DNA from: Octopus sinensis
Taxonomy: Eukaryota
Direction of reading: 5' to 3'
DNA length: 19,365 bases
NCBI RefSeq assembly: GCF_006345805.1
Contig: NW_021824205.1
Span: 1-19,365, forward strand
The position numbers and the translations under genes were made by a program. Positions 1 to 17,650 of the stretch are shown here, in pieces; positions within the stretch are counted from its first letter, which is position 1; each line of letters begins with the position of its first letter. The notes under the pieces were generated by a model that saw nothing but the letters and a program-made list of their open reading frames with translations, ran no database searches and was not told the DNA's origin.

Positions 1-162
1 ACACACACACACACACACCACACACACACACAACATTTATGGAAAAACAAGTCACGACGGGCTTCTTTTAGTTTCCGTCTACCAAATCCACTCACAAGGC
101 TTTGGTCGACCCGAGGCTATAGTAGAAGACACTTGTCCAAGGTGCCACGCAGTGGGACTGAA
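1..162 (-). mobile_element. SINE family A, partial copy (internal CA tract plus central domain, truncated in the B box)
   Basis: 54-162 is the reverse complement of 221-329 (102/109 identical by manual alignment). The (CA)n at 1-32 matches the internal microsatellite seen in the other family A copies. Confidence 0.85.
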
Positions 163-564
163 ATAGGCGCAGGAGTGGCTGTGTGGTAAGTAGCTTGCTT
201 ACCAACCACATGGTTCCGGGTTAATTCCCACTGCGTGGCACCTTGGGCAAGTGTCTTCTACTATAGCCTCGGGCCGACCAAAGCCTTGTGAGTGGATTTG
301 GTAGACGGAAACTGGAAGAAGCCCGTGGTATATATGTATATATATGTATGCGTGTATATGTTTGTGTGTCTGTGTTTGTCTCCCCCACCATTGCTTGACA
401 ACCGATGCTGGTGTGTTTATGTCCCCATAACTTAGCGGTTCAGCAAAAGAGACCGATAGAATAAGTACTAGGCTTACAAAGAATAAGTCCTGGGGTCGAT
501 TTACTCGACTAGAAGGCGGTGCTCCAGCATGGCCGCAGTCAAATGACCGAAACAAGTAAAAGAA
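163..564 (+). mobile_element. SINE family A, full-length tRNA-derived SINE
   Basis: A-box-like TGGCTGTGTGG (177-187) and B-box-like GGGTTAATTCCC (218-229). Central CCTTGGGCAAG domain, internal TA/TG microsatellite and 3' tail GGCGGTGCTCCAGCATGGCCGCAGTCAAATGACCGAAACAAGTAAAAGAA. Homologous copies lie at 3712, 8274, 10886 and 12686. Confidence 0.9.
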
Positions 565-593
565 AGAAATGAGAAAAAAGAAAGATATATATA

Positions 594-1292
594 TTCTTTT
601 ATATGTTTCAGCCCTAAGACTGTGGCCTTGCTGGGGCACCGCCAGTGTAATCAACTTTTTATTGGCTAATTCTACGTGATTGGCTTTTCTGAAGGAGAGA
701 GTTCGGCACCGCTGAACTCTTTTGAGATTCCTGCTTTGATATTGGTTCATCTTGGATCTTGGAAAGCAAGAGGTCAAGTTGTTTCTTGAAAACATCTACC
801 CCTACTCCATGGAGATCCCTCAGATGTTTTAGCAAGGCGTTAAGTAGCTGTGGGCCCTTGATTCCCAAGCTAATGCAGTACATAGTCCTCTCTTTCGATA
901 GGACAAAGGGGACTCTGGAACAGTGCAGTGACGTCCATTTCAAGGTCTGGTATAACTCTCAGTTCCAAAGTTTGGTGCCAGCCCTTCCAGTATCTTCCAC
1001 ACGTATATCACTGCATGCCCCTCCCGTCTTCGCTCCAGGGATTAGAGTCGTTAGCTCTTTCAGACTCTCCCAGAAGCTCAGCTGTTCCATTGATGCAATC
1101 TTTCTCGTGTAGCATCGCTGAACCGCCTCAGGTCCCGCTATTAATCCGACAGTAGTCCAGACGGCTGGGGACAAGAGTCCTCCATAGCACAAGCATAGCT
1201 ACCTGGTCCCTTGTTCTGAAGGTTCTCAGAATCCATCCGGCCATTTGTCTGTACACTGCCACCATCTTGGTGATATGCATATGAAATGAGGC
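594..1292 (-). mobile_element. 5'-truncated, decayed non-LTR retrotransposon (CR1/L2 group): ORF2 C-terminus, short 3' UTR and tail
   Basis: Across frameshifts the minus strand reads ASFHMHITKM..GWILRTFRTRD..LWRTLVPSRLDYC / EAVQRCYTRKI..LSFWESLKEL / SLERRRE..AVIYVWKILEG / GPQLLNAL..FKKQLDLLL..DEP, typical of the post-RT region of CR1/L2-type ORF2. Stop at 659-661 and tail at 594-643. Confidence 0.85.
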
Positions 1293-1312: not shown

Positions 1313-1755
1313 AAACGATTGACCGGAGTCTCGCATGCATGGAGTTCAACCGATTATATTTGAATGTATTTTTCAAATGCCTTCACTTCGGCGCGCTGAG
1401 ACCGGAAAAATCAACCTGCAGCTAATAAGTAGCAGCAGTCAATTTACCGGTTAGAGAACATATTTATTTTATATAAAATTAATTAAGGGTAGAAATTGAT
1501 ATTAGTCAATTAAAACCAGTGGTCTAGCATATTAAAAAGAATCCGAAGATTAAAATATTTTTACATACAAATTAAGGACTGAACACGAATTTTATATAAA
1601 ATAAATATGTTCTCTAACCGGTAAATTGACTGCTGCTACTTATTAGCTGCAGGTTGGTTTTTCCGGTCTCAGCGCGCCGAAGTGAAGGCATTTGAAAAAT
1701 ACATTCAAATATAATCGGTTGAACTCCATGCATGCGAGACTCCGGTCAATCGTTT
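1313..1755. mobile_element. Foldback/MITE-like element with 168-bp inverted arms
   Basis: 1313-1480 is the reverse complement of 1588-1755 with one mismatch (167/168). The spacer is 107 bp and AT-rich. No TSD is visible, so the element call is less certain than the inverted repeat itself. Confidence 0.7.
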
Positions 1756-2238: not shown

Positions 2239-2263
2239 TAGACGAGAAAGTAAACAAATGCCT

Positions 2264-2486
2264 ATTTCTTTATTACCCACGAGGGGCTAAACATAGAGGG
2301 GACAAACAAGGACAGACATAGGTATTAAGTCAATTACATCGACCCCAGTGCGTAACTGGTGCTTTATTTATCGACCCCGAAAGGATGAAAGGCAAAGTCG
2401 ACCTCGGCGGAATTTGAACTCACAACGTAACGGCAGACGAAATACCGCAAAGCATTTCGCCCGGCGTGCTAACGCTTCTGCCAGCT
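2264..2486 (-). mobile_element. SINE family C, near-complete copy
   Basis: The minus strand begins AGCTGGCAGAAGCGTTAGCACGCCGGGCGAAATG, has B box GAGTTCAAATTCC and ends in AATAAAGAAAT. Decayed relatives lie at 7125, 7377 and 10216. Confidence 0.8.
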
Positions 2487-2695
2487 GTTAGTGACTCTTA
2501 AGTACTCAATATGTTGTTGTTTAGGGCCATTTCGGCGTCTACCTAGGAGCCCTAGGGTAAGTACGTTCTGTGACCATCCCAAGCCAGCCCCCTTTATTTG
2601 AGGCGACTAAGTATGGGGGTTATTTGGTATATGCGTATGTGTACACACTTCGTTTTGCGTGGGTGTTAATTCAGGGTGTATATAATAATATAATA

Positions 2696-2869
2696 TACAT
2701 CCACACACACACACTCACATACACACACATACACACATACACCCACACACACACACACTCTTTTACACATACACACACATACACACTCGCTCGCACTCAC
2801 ATAAGCACACACACACACACTCTCTCTCTCTCTCTCACACACACACATACACACATACACACACACACA

Positions 2870-2906
<37 letters not shown>
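2696..2906. repeat. Compound (CA)n/(CT)n microsatellite
   Basis: Directly visible dinucleotide tracts. Confidence 0.95.
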
Positions 2907-2908
<2 letters not shown>

Positions 2909-3014
2909 GCACACATACAATTACAAAAGAGCTGCTAATGGTTTCATGCTGTCCTTGCATTTTCTAGCTGTGTATATAAAAATGATGTCTCTCCCTGGAT
3001 GGGGAAATTTTCTG

Positions 3015-3711: not shown

Positions 3712-3714
<3 letters not shown>

Positions 3715-4080
3715 TTGTTTTATTCATTTGAATGCGGCCATGCTGGAGCACGCCTCTAGACGAGCAAATCGACCACAGGATATATTCTTTGTAAGCCTAG
3801 TAATTATTTTATTAGTCTCTTTTGATGAACCGCTAAGTTACGGGAACATAAACACACCAGCATCGGTTGCCAAGCGATGTTGGGGGGACAAACACGGACA
3901 CACAAATACACATACACACACACATACGATGGGCTTCTTTCAGTTTCCATCTACCACATCCACTCACAAGGCTTTGGTCAGCCCGAGGTTATAGCAGAAG
4001 ACACTCGTCCAAGGTGCCACGCAGTAGGACTGAACCCGAAACCATGTGGTTGGTTAGTAAGCTACTTACCACACAGCCAC
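3712..4080 (-). mobile_element. SINE family A copy
   Basis: Reverse-complement homology to 163-564 from the tail to GTGGCTGTGTGGTAAG. Confidence 0.9.
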
Positions 4081-4311
4081 ACACACACACACCACACACA
4101 CATATATACACATACATACAAACAGATACATACACACACATATATACACATACATACATACATACATACATACATACATACATACACACATATTGTGCTA
4201 CATCGTATTAATACAGGAATTTTAATCTTGAAATTTCGTGTATTTCCTTGATATGCCGCCATTGTATGTCAGTATGACATAGCAGCGTGCATATGTATAA
4301 ATGCGTATATC

Positions 4312-4345
<34 letters not shown>

Positions 4346-4400
4346 TGTATGTATGTATGTATGTATGTATGTATGTATGTATGTATGTATGTATGTATCA
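4081..4400. repeat. (CA)n/(TACA)n and (TATG)n microsatellites
   Basis: Directly visible; a near-perfect (TATG)n runs at about 4316-4398. Confidence 0.95.
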
Positions 4401-4503: not shown

Positions 4504-4546
4504 CATGACCGCGGTCAAATGACTGAAACAAATAAATAAGATAAAT
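4504..4546 (+). mobile_element. Isolated fragment of the shared SINE-A/LINE 3' tail
   Basis: CATGACCGCGGTCAAATGACTGAAACAAATAAATAAGATAAAT matches the tail at 529-564. Confidence 0.75.
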
Positions 4547-4601
4547 GGATGTGTGTGTATACATACGCACACACACACACACACCACACACACACACACA
4601 T

Positions 4602-4980
4602 GGAGGCGCAATGGCCCAGTGGTTAGCGCAGCGGACTCTCGGTCGTAGGATCGCGGTTTCGATTTCCCAGACCGGGCGTTTTGAGTGTTTATTGAACGAA
4701 AACACCTAAAGCTCCACGAGGCTCCGGCAGGGGCGGGATGGCGAACCCTGCTCTACCCTTTCACCACAACTTTCACTTTTTCTTCTTGTTTCTGTTGTAC
4801 TTTGTATTCCAAAGGGCCAACCTTGAGACAAACTGTGTCACGCTGAATCCCCACTAGGACTACGTTAAGGGTACACGTGTCTGTGGAGTGCTCATCCACT
4901 TGCACGTTAATTTTACGAACGGGCTGTTCCGTTGATCGGGTCAACTGGAACCCTCGTCGTCGTAACCGACGGAGTGCCAC
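4602..4980 (+). mobile_element. SINE family B variant (B'), full length
   Basis: A box TGGCCCAGTGG (4612-4622) and B-box-like GGTTTCGATTTCCC (4655-4668). Homologous end to end with 7694-8069. Confidence 0.9.
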
Positions 4981-5168
4981 TAATAATATAGATAGATAAA
5001 TAAGATAGATAAATAGTGGAAGAGGCATTATTTTTAATGAACGTTTTAAGGTTAAAGACTCCATAAAACCCGATTCCGTAAACTGTGAGGTGAGTGCGAA
5101 TGGGTCGGGCGAAGCAGCGGAGTATTAAAAGATGAAGCGGGAGTCTCTACAAAGATTATATGGAAGTG

Positions 5169-5169
<1 letters not shown>

Positions 5170-5208
<39 letters not shown>

Positions 5209-5471
5209 TGTGAGCGTCGGGGGTGAAAGTTGGGGTTGATTGTCGGGATGAGAGATGAGAAGGCGATGGGGGTTTGTCGTGGTGGCGGTGATGGTGATGG
5301 TGATGTTATGATGGGAATACTTAGAATTATGATGGTAGCGGTGATAAACGTGGTGGTGATGATGCTGATGATAGTGGAAGTGGTGGTAGTGGTGGTGGTG
5401 GTGGTGGTGCTAAACGTGATGGTGGCGTTTAGAGGGGAACTAATGAGGTTGGAGTTAGTTTGGGAGGTAAT

Positions 5472-5512
<41 letters not shown>

Positions 5513-5555
5513 AATGGGTGGATGGGTGGGTGGATGGTGATGGTAGTGTTGATGT
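5170..5555. repeat. (GT)n and degenerate (GGT/GAT)n low-complexity tract
   Basis: Directly visible. Confidence 0.9.
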
Positions 5556-5656
5556 TGCTGTCACCGTTTATCTTGGTTATTTTCATTTGGTGCGTTGTTT
5601 TTATTATCAATCCCCTCCTGATCAGAGGCTGACTTCTTTCATTTCCTGGGGTCACT

Positions 5657-5659
<3 letters not shown>

Positions 5660-5691
<32 letters not shown>

Positions 5692-5899
5692 CACCATCAC
5701 CACCACCACCACCACTACCACCACCACCACCACTACAACTTCCACCACCACCACGACTACCACCACCACCACCACCACTACAACTTCCACCACCACCACC
5801 ACCCCACCACCACTACCACCACCACCACCACCACCACCACCACCACCACCACCACCACCACCACCACCACTACCACCACCACTACCACAACCACAACAA
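5660..5899. repeat. (ACC/AAC/TAC)n trinucleotide tract with a 45-bp higher-order duplication
   Basis: CACTACAACTTCCACC occurs at 5731 and again at 5776. Confidence 0.95.
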
Positions 5900-5921
5900 T
5901 AAAAAGTCTAGCTATGTGATT

Positions 5922-7693: not shown

Positions 7694-8069
7694 GGAGGCG
7701 CAATGGCCCAGTGGTTAGGGCAGCGGACTCGCGGTCGTAGGATTGCGGTTTCGATTCCCAGACCGGGCGTTGTAAGTGTTTATTGAGCGAAAACACCTAC
7801 AAGCTCCACGTGCTCCGGCAGGGGATGGTGGTGATCCCTGCTGTACTCTTTCACCACAACTTTCTCTCACTCTTACTTCCTGTTTCTGTTGTACCTGTAT
7901 TTGAAAGGGCCGGCCTTGTCACTCTCTGTGTCACGCTGAGTATCTCCGAGAACTACGTTAAGGGTACAGGTGTCTGTGGAGTGCTAAGCCACTTACACGT
8001 TAATTTCACGAGCAGGCTGTTCCGTTGATTCGGATCAACCGGAACCCTCATCGTCGTAACCGACGGAGT
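7694..8069 (+). mobile_element. SINE family B' full-length copy with an 11-bp TSD
   Basis: A/B-box head and homology to 4602-4980. CATTCGAAATG flanks it at 7682-7692 and 8078-8088. Confidence 0.92.
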
Positions 8070-8273: not shown

Positions 8274-8685
8274 ATTCTTTTATTCTTTTATTTGTTTCAG
8301 TCATTTGACTGTGGCCATGCTGGAACACCGCCTTTAGTCGAACAAATTGAACCCAGGACTTATTCTTTATAAGCCTAGTACTTATTCTACCGGCAACTTT
8401 TGCTGAACCGCTAAGTTACGGAGACATAAACACACCAACATCGGTTGTCAAGCGATGGTGGTGGGACAAGCACAGACGCGGCCCGCACGCACGCACGCAC
8501 ACGCGTGCACACACACATATATATGACGGGCTTCTTTCAGTTTCCGTCTACCAAATCCACTCACCAGGCTTTGGTCAGCTCGAGGCTATAGTAGAAGACA
8601 CTTGCCCAAGGTGCCACGCAGTGGGACCGAACCCGGAGCCATGTGGTTGGTTAGCAAGCTACTTACCACAGAGCCACTCCTGCGC
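8274..8685 (-). mobile_element. SINE family A, full-length copy
   Basis: Reverse complement of the family A copy at 163-564, from GCGCAGGAGTGGCT to a (TAAAAGAA)n tail. Confidence 0.92.
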
Positions 8686-9269: not shown

Positions 9270-9756
9270 GTGTAGAATAAAATTCTTGAAAGGAAAAAAA
9301 ATAATAAAATAAACGTTTTTTAAAACCCAAACTAATATTTATAGACTTATCTGCTTCGAGTATCACTGCAAAACAATGTACTTTATATTTCACAAAGTTT
9401 CTAAATTCTTATAAAACCATCCCCGTCAGTAATACTTTGGTGAATGACATACACAATCTGTTGGGACCATTCAACGTTAAATATAGAAATATGTGAATGC
9501 ATCTAACGACTTGCCGTAAGTACAGTCTCAAGTTATATGAAATACTATGACGTAATGAGAATGATTTCTGCCTTTTTGTTGTAGGGAGAGAAATGTGTCC
9601 ATGTAACCAAGCATAGCCAATCGACACATCACGATACGTTCGTAGTTTAATGTTTCGGACATGTGGATTGTCTATGTTCACCTTGTAGATCGTTTGCTTC
9701 TAGTAAATTTGTAACGACGTATTTTATTTGAAAATGTAGCCCTTTTCAAATATGAT

Positions 9757-9820
9757 GGCGGTGCCTCAACATGGCCGCAGTCTAATGATTGAAACACGAA
9801 GAAAAAAAAAGATAAAAGAT
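9757..9820 (+). mobile_element. Solo copy of the shared SINE-A/LINE 3' tail
   Basis: GGCGGTGCCTCAACATGGCCGCAGTCTAATGATTGAAACAC plus an A-rich AAGATA repeat. The upstream sequence matches neither SINE-A nor the LINE. Confidence 0.8.
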
Positions 9821-10830: not shown

Positions 10831-11091
10831 CCTTTAGCATTCAGATTACTCTGTCAAATATAATGATTATTTATTCTCGTTATTGTTCTTTTATTCTTTT
10901 ACTTGTTTCAATCATTTGACTGCGGCCATGCTGGAGCACCGCCTTTAGTCGAGCAAATCGACCCCAGGATTTATTCTTTGTAAGTCTAGTACTTATTCTA
11001 TCGGTCTCTTTTCCCGAACCTCTAAGTCACGGGGATGTAAATACACCAGCATCGGTTGTCAAGCGATTTTGGGGGACAAACACAGACACAT

Positions 11092-11126
<35 letters not shown>

Positions 11127-11426
11127 TATATACGACGAGCTTCTTTCAGTTTCCATCTACCAAATCCACTCACAAGGTTTTGGTCGGCCTGAGGCTATAG
11201 TAGAAGACGCTTGGCCAAGGTGCCACGCAGTGGGACTGAATCCGGAACCATGTGGCTGGTAAGCAAGCTACTTACCACACATGCGTAACTTCAAGATTTC
11301 AATGATGTGATTCTTTATTTTTAGAATGACATTGTAGGATAGGTGTGAGAGGCTGGATCTGGCCAGTTTGAGCATAATAAAAGACGGGCTATTTGAGCCT
11401 GATATGGATCGCTTCGATGGTAAAGG
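10831..11426. mobile_element. TTAA-flanked (piggyBac-type) MITE remnant interrupted by SINE-A
   Basis: The left end reads TTAA|CCTTTAGCATT. A candidate right TIR GATGGTAAAGG (11416-11426) matches its reverse complement at 9/11 positions. The right-hand TTAA is not preserved. Confidence 0.4.
10886..11281 (-). mobile_element. SINE family A copy
   Basis: Reverse-complement homology to 163-564. The extreme 5' end is missing. Confidence 0.9.
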
Positions 11427-12597: not shown

Positions 12598-12680
12598 ACA
12601 TATACATATGCATATATATATATATATATGTATGTGTACATATACATACATGTATATATATATATGTGTGTGTGTGTGGG
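12480..12680. repeat. (CA)/(TA)/(TG) microsatellites
   Basis: Directly visible. Confidence 0.9.
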
Positions 12681-12685
12681 GGAGG

Positions 12686-12901
12686 TTGTGTGTCTGTGTT
12701 TGTCCCCCTAGCATTGCTTGACAACCGATGCTGGTGTGTTTACGTCCCCGTCTCTTAGCGGTTCGGCAAAAGAGACCGATAGAATAAGTACTGGGCTTAC
12801 AAAGAATAATTCCCGGGGTCGATTTGCTCGACTAAAAGGCGGTGCTCCAGCATGGCGCAGTCAAATGACTGAAACAGTAAAAGAGTAAAAGAGTAAAAGA
12901 G

Positions 12902-14258: not shown

Positions 14259-14334
14259 TATAATATTATATTATATATGTACATATATACCTATACATAT
14301 GTACATTATACGTGTAAATACATACACATATATT

Positions 14335-14377
<43 letters not shown>

Positions 14378-14417
14378 ATATATATATATGTATATATATA
14401 TATGTATGTAATATATA

Positions 14418-14460
<43 letters not shown>

Positions 14461-14652
14461 TTAAGTAATACATCTATGTATGTATACATATAATATAAAT
14501 ATGTATGTATGTATGTATGTACACATGAAAACATTTTGAGATATTTAATCATGCATAGACATACATATATTATATGTACACATATATACATAAATATAGC
14601 GATATATATATATGTATCGCGATATTTGTATGTGTGCGTATCTAAGTCTGCG

Positions 14653-14710
<58 letters not shown>

Positions 14711-14790
14711 GTATGTATGTATTATATTGCTCATTCATTTATATATATGCATATATATATATATATATGTTGAATATGTAGATATGTGAG
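14190..14790. repeat. Degenerate (TA)n/(TATG)n tract
   Basis: Directly visible. Confidence 0.9.
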
Positions 14791-15500: not shown

Positions 15501-16025
15501 ACTTACACATTCTGTTTTACATGTATGTGTTTGAGTTTGTGGTGTGAGAGAATTGAAAGGGTGGGAGTGCAGCCCTCAAACCGAAGGCGGCGACGGCGGC
15601 GTCGGCAGTGATCCTTATGAAAGTGGTGGTGAGTTCTGAAGGCAAGGCAAAGTTGATATGAATGGTTATAGAAAATAAAGTCACAGGATGAGAAAGGTGG
15701 AAGAGAGAGGGAGTAGAGAAAGAGAGAACAGGAACAGTAGATAGGGTGCTGGTAATGTGAGGGCGGCGACTCGAGACAGTTAATTATAGATAAGCCAAAG
15801 AGAGGGGGAGAGTTGTATAATCATAGAGAGGGAGTGAGAGAGAGAGAGTATTCTAAGTTTCAATTATATGATTTTATTGGAGTTATCTCCCTTGATAGTC
15901 CATTTGAGTTTCTCGTGTAGATCCTGTCGACATTGGTAATCCCAGTTTATCGAAATTTTTCTGCACACGATATCACCTATGGCAGACAGAGCCGCCTGTG
16001 CATTTCTGACGTAGAGCGCTTCCCT

Positions 16026-16287
16026 TCTAGCTGTTTATGTATGTATGTATGTATGTATGTATGTATGTATGTATGTATGTATGTATGTATGTGTGTACGT
16101 ATGTATGTATGTATGTATGCATGCATGCATGTATGTATGTATGTATGTATGTGTATGTATGTATGTATGTATGTATGTATGTATGTATGTATGTATGAAT
16201 GCATGTATGTATGTATGTATGTATGTATGTATGCATGCATGCATGCATGCATGTATGTATGTATGTATGCATGTATGTATGTATGTA
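16026..16287. repeat. (TATG)n/(CATG)n tetranucleotide array
   Basis: Directly visible. Confidence 0.97.
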
Positions 16288-16838
16288 TGAGACCTGATCA
16301 ATAAGTATCCGGACTGTTGCTATAGTAATGAAGGTAAGGCACACAGAGTGAAGCCGCTTGGCACAGATTGACCTTGAATTCTGTTGTGCATGCGCACTAA
16401 GTTTTAACGTTCTATCTCACTTTCGCTGTTTACAGCAGTACATGGAAGGAAGGTGTGTAGCGTGTGATCGTCACATTGACCATGGCAGAGAAAGCTCTCT
16501 TGGCGATACCTGTATAGAGGCCTATGCAAAGTTGCAGAAAGTGTAAGGAGAGGAGTGTATGAACCGCACACAAGTGTACGAATGGTTTAGACGTTTCCAG
16601 GATGGCTGAAAAAATGTCGATATTGAACGATCTGGGAAACCCGCAACCAGCCGAAGAGAAAAACAAACATCGTAAATGTGCGTGCAGCTGTGAGGGAAAC
16701 TCGTCGAATCACCATCCGCTAAAACGTAGTGCGCATGCACAGCAGAGATTAAGGTCAATCTGTGCCAAGCGGTTTCACTCTGCTTACCTTAGCTTCGTTA
16801 CTATAGTAACAGTCCGGATACTTATTGATCAGACCACG
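16288..16838 (+). mobile_element. Internally deleted mariner (Tc1/mariner) element with ~119-bp TIRs
   Basis: TA TSDs at 16286-87 and 16839-40. 16288-16406 matches the reverse complement of 16720-16838 at about 103/119. A transposase N-terminal remnant lies inside. Confidence 0.93.
16482..16720 (+). pseudogene. Mariner transposase N-terminal HTH remnant
   Basis: Reads M..LGDTCIEAYAKLQKV*GEECMNRTQVYEWFRRFQDG*KNVDIERSGKPATS / NIVNVRAAVRETRRITIR. This matches the Mos1/Himar-type paired HTH motifs (VY.WF.RF..G, ERSGRP) with stops and frameshifts. The DDD catalytic domain is absent. Confidence 0.9.
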
Positions 16839-16974
16839 TATACGCGCAAATTTGTATGTTTTACTCTATGCATGTATTCTCATGCATATACTCGCATGTA
16901 TAGACATGCTCATATAATATTTAAATGAAAAACGTCTGGAAAGTTTTATAGATTTTTACTGCTCTAGTGATAGA

Positions 16975-17650
16975 ATGTATGTATGTATGTATGTATGTAT
17001 TGTGTATGTTGTATGTATGTATGTATGTATGTATGTATGTATGTATGTATGCACTGTCTATGATGTAATGTATGTATGTATGTATGTATGTATGTATGTA
17101 TGTATGTATGTATGTATGTATGTATGTTGTATGTATGTTGTATGTATGTATGTATGTATGTATGTATGTATGTATGTATGTATGTTGTATGTATGTATGT
17201 ATGTATGTATGTATGTATGTATGTATGTATGTATGTATGTATGTGTTTGGATGTATGTATGTATGTATGTATGTATTGTATGTATGTATGTTGTATTGTT
17301 TGTATGTATGTATGTAGGTATGTATGTATGTATGTGTATGCATGTATGTATGTATGTATGTATGTATGTATGTATGTATGTATGTTGTTGTATTGTAATG
17401 TATGTATGTGATGTATGTTGTAGTATGTATGTATGTATGTATGTATGTATGTATGAATGTATGTATGTATGTATGTTGTATGTATGTATGTATGTATGGA
17501 TGTATGTTGTATGTATATATGAATGTATGTATGTATGTTATGTATGTATGTATGTATGTATGTATGTATGTATGTATGTATGTATGTATGTATGTATGTA
17601 TGCTTGTATGTATGTATGTGTGTGTGTGTGTGTGTGTGTACGTGTGTGTG
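16975..17650. repeat. Long interrupted (TATG)n array ending in (TG)n
   Basis: Directly visible. Confidence 0.97.

What the first reader, a model, noticed from the sequence alone, without database searches (positions are those of the whole stretch)
515..1292. SINE-A and a CR1/L2-group LINE share a 50-nt 3' tail and sit tail-to-tail, identifying a candidate LINE-SINE partnership
Seen: the SINE tail (515-564, +) and the LINE tail (594-643, -) align ungapped at 40/50. Homology starts abruptly at GGCGGTGC, only 15 nt after the LINE ORF2 stop (659-661). Established: L2/CR1-type SINEs borrow the partner LINE 3' end, a stem-loop plus short terminal repeat, for retrotransposition (as in the eel UnaSINE1/UnaL2 pair). 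Inference: this LINE family mobilised the most abundant SINE in the window. Whether this specific pair is already described is unknown to me.
Basis: partly seen in the sequence, partly recalled or inferred. Interest (0 to 1): 0.7.

Follow-up and report, generated by a model that had tools for sequence, protein, structure and literature searches.

The report
SINE sharing a CR1-like LINE tail
A short parasitic repeat (SINE) scattered through this octopus-like genome ends in the same ~55-base, two-hairpin tail as a CR1-like LINE lying next to it; this is the ordinary way SINEs borrow a LINE's copying machinery, so the case is real but of a well-known kind.

Summary
Window 515-564(+) and the reverse complement of 594-643 match at 40/50 ungapped, against a maximum of 30/50 in 300 shuffled windows. 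The similarity starts abruptly at GGCGGTGC, 15 nt after the stop of a decayed, 5'-truncated LINE ORF2 remnant (662-1292, minus).

Three intact full-length ORF2 relatives (endonuclease plus reverse transcriptase, 984-1041 aa) and four decayed copies from elsewhere carry the same tail 8-21 nt after their stop. One decayed copy lies in the Octopus vulgaris assembly. The tail is therefore the LINE's own 3' UTR.

It folds into two hairpins, followed by UGAAAC and short terminal repeats. Hairpin 2 keeps pairing through compensatory changes (U-A in SINEs, C-G or U-G in LINEs). The window's LINE subfamily also shares the SINE's terminal octamer TAAAAGAA.

Corrections:
- "SINE-A" is only the 3' half of a ~400-nt composite SINE (tRNA-like head, CORE-like domain, internal microsatellite, body, tail).
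- The LINE looks CR1-like rather than L2.
- The hairpin-2 loop differs between the SINE and every sampled LINE, so the exact driver subfamily and the timing remain open.

This is an ordinary stringent-type SINE/LINE partnership.

The parts
166..320 (+). Head of the composite SINE: a tRNA-like part with A-box-like (GTGGCTGTGTGG) and B-box-like (GGTTCCGGGTTAATTCC) motifs, then a CORE-like domain (CCTTGGGCAAGT...).
   Evidence: Four copies at 90-94% identity, each directly 5' of a 'SINE-A' copy. Sequences, consensus. No Rfam or ARAGORN tRNA hit, so 'tRNA-like' rests on my reading of the motifs and an acceptor-like stem.
321..375 (+). Internal (TA)n/(TG)n microsatellite of the SINE, variable in length between copies.
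   Evidence: Present between head and 3' half in all four full copies.
376..514 (+). It has no similarity to any LINE sequence fetched.
   Evidence: Five-copy alignment. Sensitive BLAST of the body against all LINE loci gives only chance hits.
515..553 (+). SINE tail core: hairpin 1 (515-534), hairpin 2 (536-549), and an almost invariant UGAAAC (548-553; this copy has C at 548).
554..584 (+). Degenerate terminal repeats of the SINE. TAAAAGAA-type octamers occur in 2-4 units in other copies.
   Evidence: A3 and A5 have 2 units; A2 shows 3 complete GTAAAAGA units plus part of a fourth in that extract.
585..593 (.). (AT)n run at the tail-to-tail junction. (TA)n also follows other SINE and LINE 3' ends.
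594..643 (-). LINE 3' tail: hairpin 1 (643-624), hairpin 2 (622-609), GAAAC (609-605), terminal octamer TAAAAGAA (601-594).
   Evidence: The same tail sits in the same position in L001, L002, L003, L005, L006 and L007.
644..661 (-). 15-nt spacer of the LINE 3' UTR (644-658) and the ORF2 stop codon TAA (659-661).
662..1292 (-). Decayed, 5'-truncated C-terminal part of the LINE ORF2, matching residues 763-973 of the intact relative P0001. It has frameshifts and internal stops.
8283..8685 (-). Second full composite SINE copy (head, microsatellite, body, tail).
10894..11281 (-). Third composite SINE copy, slightly 5'-truncated.
3712..4080 (-). Fourth composite SINE copy. Its tail end has been replaced by (TA)n.
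12646..12884 (+). SINE 3' half only, preceded by a long microsatellite. It ends in repeated GTAAAAGA octamers.
9756..9812 (+). Tail-only fragment that begins exactly at GGCGGTGC. It is an extremely 5'-truncated SINE or LINE copy. Its hairpin-2 loop (UAAU) is intermediate between the SINE and LINE versions.
4504..4547 (+). Truncated tail fragment, from the 3' side of hairpin 1 onward.

Best explanation
The ~55-nt end of the SINE is a copy of the 3' UTR of a CR1-like, stringent-type LINE lineage. One dead, 5'-truncated member of that lineage happens to lie tail-to-tail with a SINE copy here.

Shown: the tail belongs to the LINE. It consists of two adjacent hairpins, an almost invariant UGAAAC and short terminal repeats. 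Only this module is shared between the SINE and the LINE.

Inferred from work on other stringent LINEs: the LINE's ORF2 protein recognises the hairpin module on its own RNA. Pol III transcripts of the SINE present the same module and are bound in trans. After endonuclease nicking, the terminal TAAAAGAA repeats pair or slip on the target to prime reverse transcription. That would explain the variable number of octamers and the frequent 5' truncation.

The SINE itself is a ~400-nt composite: tRNA-like head, CORE-like domain, internal microsatellite, body, then the LINE tail.
For: (1) The match is 40/50 against at most 30/50 in shuffles.

(2) Three intact ORF2 relatives carry GGYGGTGCCCCAGCATGGCCRCAGC...GCTGAAAC plus terminal repeats 8-21 nt after their stop. 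They are P0001, P0075 and P0076, 984-1041 aa, with Exo_endo_phos and RVT_1 domains. Decayed copies L005, L006 and L007 carry the tail too. L006 is in O. vulgaris GCA_951406725.2 (assembly named in PMC13282606).

(3) The tail is older than the SINE copies. It is shared by LINE lineages that differ by K2P 0.33-0.55 in the adjacent coding region.

(4) Structure: 91.6% of cells pair in the two-hairpin model, against 21-40% when partners are slid. At pair 25:32 the SINEs have U-A, five LINE copies have C-G and the window LINE has U-G. Single-sequence folds give the same two hairpins.

(5) The terminal octamer TAAAAGAA is shared by the SINE and the window's LINE subfamily (window copy, L005, L006, L007; L007 has two units, as in the SINE) but not by L001-L003. 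The window copy is the closest of all sampled LINE tails to the SINE consensus, at 32/39 plus 10/12.

(6) No similarity exists outside the tail.

(7) Stringent LINEs need their cognate 3' stem-loop, which ORF2 binds (PMC4176376). The eel UnaL2/UnaSINE1 precedent is cited there (Kajikawa and Okada 2002).

(8) Composite SINE: all 4 heads are followed by the 3' half in the same orientation, and head and 3'-half divergences rank the same way per copy.
Against: No LINE copy sampled has the SINE's hairpin-2 loop (AAAU, against UUAG, CUAG, UUCG, CAUG and others), and hairpin 2 matches at only 6-10 of 14 positions. In zebrafish L2 elements the loop is what the cognate protein discriminates (PMC4176376). 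The sampled subfamilies may therefore not be the actual driver.

The window's LINE copy is dead. The three intact relatives have different terminal repeats, and their source species is unknown.

The age comparison is weak. SINE copies are K2P 0.02-0.10 from a 4-5-copy consensus. The window LINE is 0.09 from a 7-copy consensus that is biased towards it, and the other copies are 0.15-0.24.

The covariation sample is small (13 sequences). No experiment has been done.
Confidence: 0.8

Rival explanations
1. The lineage is right but the subfamily is wrong. The SINE was, or is, driven by an unsampled subfamily of the same CR1-like lineage whose hairpin 2 carries the AAAU loop. The copy at 594-1292 belongs to a sister subfamily that never mobilised it.
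For: Hairpin-2 loops differ consistently between the SINE and all seven LINE tails. Loop-specific recognition is documented for ZfL2-1 and ZfL2-2 (PMC4176376). The tail-only fragment at 9756-9812 has an intermediate loop (UAAU) and a LINE-like C at position 9, which hints at further tail variants.
Against: Hairpin 1 is 16-19 of 20 identical between the SINE and all LINEs, and UGAAAC is almost invariant, so recognition may rest there. The window's subfamily shares the terminal octamer with the SINE. Only about 10 LINE copies were sampled.
Confidence: 0.35
2. The 50 nt next to the LINE ORF are not part of the LINE but a separate, inverted, heavily 5'-truncated SINE fragment that landed beside it.
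For: Tail-only fragments do exist in the window (9756-9812, 4504-4547).
Against: Seven independent LINE copies from other loci and samples carry the tail at the same distance from the ORF2 stop. They include three with intact ORF2.
Confidence: 0.02
3. The direction is reversed: the LINE acquired its 3' end from the SINE.
For: Sequence sharing alone does not give a direction.
Against: The tail is present in LINE lineages that have diverged by K2P 0.33-0.55 in the coding region, much deeper than the SINE copies (pairwise 0.09-0.20). The tail starts within 8-21 nt of the stop and forms essentially the whole 3' UTR.
Confidence: 0.03
4. The similarity is due to chance or low complexity.
For: The last ~12 nt are A-rich.
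Against: The match is 40/50 against a maximum of 30/50 in 300 shuffles. The most conserved part is the GC-rich hairpin 1.
Confidence: 0.01

Closest known systems
UnaSINE1 / UnaL2 (eel) and ZfL2-1 / ZfL2-2 (zebrafish): stringent-type L2 LINEs whose 3' stem-loop plus short terminal repeats are required for retrotransposition and are shared with partner SINEs (PMC4176376; Kajikawa and Okada 2002, cited there)
   Same: A short conserved 3' tail with a stem-loop, followed by short tandem repeats and no poly(A). SINE-LINE similarity is confined to that tail. The number of terminal repeats varies.
   Different: Here there are two adjacent hairpins, the repeat unit is an octamer (TAAAAGAA) rather than a penta- or hexamer, and the LINE looks CR1-like rather than L2. 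No functional assay exists for this pair.
CR1-clade LINEs and their SINEs, for example the tortoise Pol III/SINE with a CR1-like LINE (Ohshima et al. 1996, from my own knowledge); CR1 3' ends carrying microsatellites (PMC11303007)
   Same: An endonuclease plus reverse transcriptase ORF2 of ~1000 aa, and relatives with an upstream ORF1. The 3' UTR is very short and ends in a hairpin region plus an 8-nt repeat, without poly(A), and copies show extreme 5' truncation. From memory, the ORF2 C-terminal motif pattern resembles that of chicken CR1.
   Different: The octamer sequence differs from the vertebrate CR1 octamer.
CORE-SINEs, including the octopus OR1/OR2 SINEs (Ohshima and Okada 1994, cited in PMC4824008 and PMC4758252); 'tRNA-Core' SINEs reported as the main octopus SINE type (PMC8967140)
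   Same: A tRNA-like head is followed by a segment with the CCTTGGGCAAGT-type CORE signature, and the element is abundant in an octopus-like genome.
   Different: I could not compare it with the OR1/OR2 or Repbase/Dfam consensus sequences, so identity with a named family is untested. This element has an internal microsatellite and a further ~190-nt 3' module.

Membership tests
SINE with a LINE-derived 3' tail (stringent-type SINE/LINE partnership) | The 3' end of the SINE is similar to the 3' end of a LINE beyond chance. | tested here: met
   40/50 against at most 30/50 in shuffles. The SINE consensus against the seven LINE tails gives 26-32 of 39 over the hairpins and GAAAC.
SINE with a LINE-derived 3' tail (stringent-type SINE/LINE partnership) | The shared segment is the genuine 3' end of full-length LINE copies. 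| tested here: met
   L001, L002 and L003 (intact ORF2 of 984-1041 aa) have the tail 8-21 nt after the stop.
SINE with a LINE-derived 3' tail (stringent-type SINE/LINE partnership) | Similarity is restricted to the tail; the head and body are of other origin. | tested here: met
   BLAST of the SINE head and body against all LINE loci gives only chance hits.
SINE with a LINE-derived 3' tail (stringent-type SINE/LINE partnership) | A conserved stem-loop in the tail, with terminal short tandem repeats and no poly(A). | tested here: met
   Two hairpins with 91.6% of cells paired and covariation at pair 25:32. Octamer repeats are shared with the window's LINE subfamily.
SINE with a LINE-derived 3' tail (stringent-type SINE/LINE partnership) | The LINE protein mobilises the SINE in trans. 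| not testable with these tools
   This needs a retrotransposition assay.
SINE with a LINE-derived 3' tail (stringent-type SINE/LINE partnership) | The activity periods of the SINE and the LINE overlap. | tested here: inconclusive
   SINE copies are K2P 0.02-0.10 from a local consensus. The window LINE is 0.09 (biased low) and other copies are 0.15-0.24. The sample is too small and is ascertained through the window copy.
CR1-clade non-LTR retrotransposon | An ORF2 with an apurinic-type endonuclease and a reverse transcriptase, and no RNase H. | tested here: met
   P0001, P0075 and P0076 hit PF03372/PF14529 and PF00078. The PDB search finds only LINE-1 ORF2p and R2 reverse transcriptases, at a distance.
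CR1-clade non-LTR retrotransposon | A separate ORF1 upstream of ORF2. | tested here: inconclusive
   Relatives at ~41% identity have one. L014 has an ORF1 of 456 aa with Cys/His-rich finger-like motifs, and L015 has an ORF1 cut by the contig end. The region upstream of ORF2 in L002 shows the same CCCH-like motif. No full-length element of the window's own subfamily was recovered. The L014 ORF1 has no PDB match.
CR1-clade non-LTR retrotransposon | A 3' end with a hairpin and an ~8-nt tandem repeat, and no poly(A). | tested here: met
CR1-clade non-LTR retrotransposon | The RT domain groups with the CR1 clade in a phylogeny with reference elements. | not testable with these tools
   No Repbase, Dfam or RTclass1 references were available, and the database names of relatives are uninformative.
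   The C-terminal motif pattern of P0001 (…SYW-RL-EL-L-SLE-RR…) resembles chicken CR1 rather than L2, but only from my memory of those sequences. No reference comparison was run.
CORE-SINE / tRNA-Core SINE | A tRNA-derived head with pol III A and B boxes. | tested here: inconclusive
   By my reading, the A-box-like motif matches 10/11 and a B-box-like motif lies ~34 nt downstream (sequences). ARAGORN and Rfam give no tRNA hit, even at E<=10.
CORE-SINE / tRNA-Core SINE | A CORE central domain. | not tested
   The resemblance of CTGCGTGGCACCTTGGGCAAGTG...GCCTCGG to the MIR/CORE signature is recalled from memory. The SINEBase supplement is not held.

The most novel reading that the evidence does not exclude
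The SINE is a chimera that changed partner. An older CORE-SINE ending in a (TA/TG)n microsatellite, the kind of end typical of RTE-mobilised elements, acquired a new ~190-nt 3' module carrying a CR1-like tail. The internal microsatellite would be the scar of that fusion. The tail swap would have opened the octopus-specific SINE expansion, driven by a CR1-like LINE rather than by the RTE or Dong elements that the octopus literature has focused on.
Probability: 0.2. Interest if true: 0.55.

Novelty: new member of a known kind. Interest (0 to 1): 0.3.

Why it matters
SINEs are reported as the largest or second-largest repeat class in Octopus genomes and have been invoked in their reorganisation (PMC8967140, PMC13282606, PMC12988792). 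In the papers I could search, most octopus SINE families are unclassified, no partner LINE is assigned, and attention has gone to the RTE element RTE-2_OV (PMC9115989). Knowing that an abundant CORE-type SINE ends in the 3' UTR of a CR1-like LINE says whose reverse transcriptase spread it. It also gives a concrete RNA module (two hairpins, UGAAAC, octamer repeat) to test. The principle itself has been textbook knowledge since the 1990s.

Tried and rejected
- The search for homologous proteins with the 99-aa C-terminal piece found nothing; only the full HMMER scan did.
- A scan of JGI metagenome contigs with the tail pattern gave two GC-rich bacterial chance matches. The IMG/VR scan gave none.
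- The exact-protein look-up of a window ORF, meant to identify the source assembly, found nothing, so the species of the window is inferred, not shown.
- Rfam at gathering and E-value thresholds, and ARAGORN, gave no tRNA hit for the SINE head. The miRNA-like hits at 515-660 are artefacts of the tail-to-tail inverted repeat.
- No other LINE copy and no coding remnant lies upstream of the tail-only fragment at 9756.
- I saw no clear target-site duplications flanking the composite SINE copies.
- The SINEBase supplement with consensus sequences is not held. Ohshima 1996 and Albertin 2015 are not held.
- Full-text searches for the sequences themselves, and for an octopus SINE/CR1 pairing, found no paper describing this pair.
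- The PDB search of a relative's ORF1 found nothing.

Full report
**Observation**

Window 515-564(+) and the reverse complement of 594-643 are identical at 40 of 50 ungapped positions. The best match of that 50-mer anywhere in 300 dinucleotide-preserving shuffles of the window was 30/50 (mean 25.9). Upstream of GGCGGTGC nothing aligns.

On the minus strand the stop TAA is at 659-661, 15 nt before the tail. Upstream of it, 662-1292 encodes a decayed C-terminal part of a non-LTR ORF2, readable only as pieces in three frames.

**What the LINE is**

A word-indexed search with the 99-aa piece next to the tail found nothing. A full HMMER scan of 1.84 billion representatives found 74 relatives. The best, P0001, is an intact 984-aa protein with endonuclease and RVT_1 domains. 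Its residues 763-973 match window 1292-686 in two frames at 49-67% identity.

A search with P0001 gave two more intact close relatives, P0075 (72% identity) and P0076 (64%), and a broad clade at ~40% identity. PDB comparison shows only distant similarity to LINE-1 ORF2p and R2.

Relatives at ~41% identity have an upstream ORF1. In L014 it is 456 aa with Cys/His-rich finger-like motifs, and in L015 it is cut by the contig end. The region upstream of ORF2 in L002 shows the same CCCH-like motif.

Several features fit a CR1-like element: two ORFs, an ORF2 of ~1000 aa, no poly(A), and a very short 3' UTR ending in hairpins and an octamer repeat. From memory, the C-terminal motif pattern also resembles chicken CR1 rather than L2. 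A reference RT phylogeny could not be run, so clade membership is not formally tested.

**Is the tail the LINE's own?**

DNA around the proteins was fetched. All three loci with intact ORF2 carry the tail immediately after the stop:
- L001: TGA, 7 nt, then GGTGGTGCCCCAGCATGGCCGCAGCCCTAGCGCTGAAACAAT(TAAAT)n.
- L002: TGA, 13 nt, then GGCGGTGCCCCAGCATGGCCACAGCCTTCGCGCTGAAAC...
- L003: TAA, 21 nt, then GGCGGTGCCCCAGCATGGCCACAGCTCATGAGCTGAAAC....

Decayed copies of the window's own subfamily have it too. These are L005, L007 and L006. L006 lies in chromosome OX597824.1 of GCA_951406725.2, which PMC13282606 names as the Octopus vulgaris assembly xcOctVulg1.2.

BLAST of these copies to the window stops at 1292, which confirms the 5' truncation there. 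The tail is therefore the LINE's 3' UTR, not a neighbouring SINE scrap. It is shared by LINE lineages that differ by K2P 0.33-0.55 in the adjacent coding region. It is thus older than the SINE copies, which argues that the SINE took it from the LINE and not the reverse.

**Anatomy of the tail**

Single-sequence folds of the LINE tail, SINE tails and the tail-only fragment all give two adjacent hairpins. In a 13-sequence alignment (A2) the model has three parts: hairpin 1 in columns 1-20, hairpin 2 in columns 22-35, then UGAAAC.

The model pairs 91.6% of cells, against 21-40% when the 3' partners are slid by 1-3 columns. Pair 25:32 is U-A in the SINEs, C-G in five LINE copies and U-G in the window LINE. 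The sample is small, so this is supportive rather than conclusive.

Hairpin 1 is nearly identical between the SINE and the LINEs (16-19 of 20). Hairpin 2 keeps its stem but not its loop, matching at 6-10 of 14 positions, with AAAU in the SINE against UUAG, CUAG, UUCG or CAUG in the LINEs.

After UGAAAC the SINE ends in 2-4 copies of TAAAAGAA or GTAAAAGA. The window's LINE subfamily ends in the same octamer, and L007 has two units exactly as in the SINE. The intact relatives end in other repeats. Of all LINE tails sampled, the window copy is the closest to the SINE consensus.

**What the SINE is**

A second repeat (166-320) has four full copies. Each lies directly 5' of a 'SINE-A' copy in the same orientation, separated only by a (TA/TG)n tract of variable length. 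The divergence of head and 3' half from their consensus ranks the same way copy by copy.

The parsimonious reading is one composite SINE of ~400 nt. It has a tRNA-like head with A- and B-box-like motifs, a CORE-like segment (CCTTGGGCAAGT...), an internal microsatellite, a body and the LINE tail.

ARAGORN and Rfam do not call the head a tRNA, so 'tRNA-like' rests on my reading of the motifs. The CORE resemblance is from memory. It agrees with reports that tRNA-Core SINEs dominate octopus genomes (PMC8967140) and that the octopus OR1/OR2 SINEs are CORE-SINEs (PMC4824008, PMC4758252). Head and body have no similarity to any LINE sequence fetched.

**Mechanism**

Shown: a shared, structured, LINE-owned tail. 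By analogy with stringent-type LINEs, the 3' stem-loop is required for retrotransposition, is bound by the ORF2 region between the endonuclease and RT domains, and lets SINEs be mobilised in trans (PMC4176376 and the eel work cited there). The inference is that this LINE lineage's ORF2 protein binds the two-hairpin module on SINE RNA and primes reverse transcription on the terminal octamers. The variable octamer number and the extreme 5' truncations (9756-9812, 4504-4547) fit that.

The main caveat is the different hairpin-2 loop. In zebrafish L2 elements the loop is what is discriminated (PMC4176376), so the true driver may be an unsampled subfamily.

The tail-to-tail position is most simply a coincidence in a SINE-dense region. 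It could also reflect a shared preference for (TA)n-rich targets, because (TA)n follows several SINE and LINE ends.

**Timing**

SINE copies lie K2P 0.02-0.10 from a local consensus. The window LINE lies 0.09 from a consensus of seven decayed copies, a figure biased low because those copies were found through it, and the others lie at 0.15-0.24. This is compatible with overlap but does not establish it.

**Novelty**

No paper in the searchable library describes this pair or contains these sequences. Recent octopus repeat work leaves most SINE families unclassified (PMC13282606) and highlights an RTE element (PMC9115989). Repbase, Dfam and SINEBase could not be consulted.

The kind of relationship is long established. 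I therefore rate this as a new member of a known kind, of modest interest.

Noticed in passing
window 63-157 (-) with 226-320 (+): An inverted, 5'-truncated copy of the SINE's CORE-like part abuts the full SINE head-to-head. It is 95.8% identical to the neighbouring copy, higher than between other copies (90-94%). Its own 3' side runs into (TG)n at the window start. It could be a second insertion or a local inverted duplication.
   Followed up: partly
window 1313-1755: A large foldback with two ~220-nt arms at 86% complementarity starts about 20 nt from the LINE's 5'-truncation point. It is MITE- or hairpin-like, with no coding capacity seen.
   Followed up: no
window 2263-2490 (-); L001 3238-3285: A third SINE family lies on the minus strand. 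Its 3' end is 93.8% identical to the sequence flanking the intact LINE in L001. That suggests L001, from an ENA 'metagenome' assembly, actually comes from a related cephalopod genome.
   Followed up: partly
window ~4598-4700 (+), 4806-4890, 7888-7983, 2004-2100: Another SINE family has a clearly tRNA-like head (GGCGCAATGGCCCAGTGGTTAGCGC...). It does not carry the CR1-like tail.
   Followed up: no
window 9756-9812 (+): A tail-only fragment begins exactly at GGCGGTGC. Its hairpin-2 loop (UAAU) is intermediate between the SINE and LINE versions, and its terminal repeats are GATAAAA-like. It may derive from a LINE subfamily closer to the SINE.
   Followed up: partly
window 515-660: The two tails form a ~130-nt inverted repeat, which Rfam's permissive scan reports as weak miRNA- or sRNA-like hairpins (E 0.02-0.05). 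This is an artefact of the arrangement.
   Followed up: yes
window 2700-2940, 4100-4400, 5050-5900, 14270-14740, 15930-17650: Long microsatellite or low-complexity tracts ((CA)n, (TATG)n, (ATGT/ACAT)n and others) generate long spurious ORFs in the ORF listing.
   Followed up: no
L014 4572-4620: A ~41% relative of the LINE, from a Tara Oceans contig, has a quite different short 3' UTR ending in three copies of ATCAAGTAAAC. The two-hairpin tail is therefore specific to the octopus-type lineage, not to the whole clade.
   Followed up: partly
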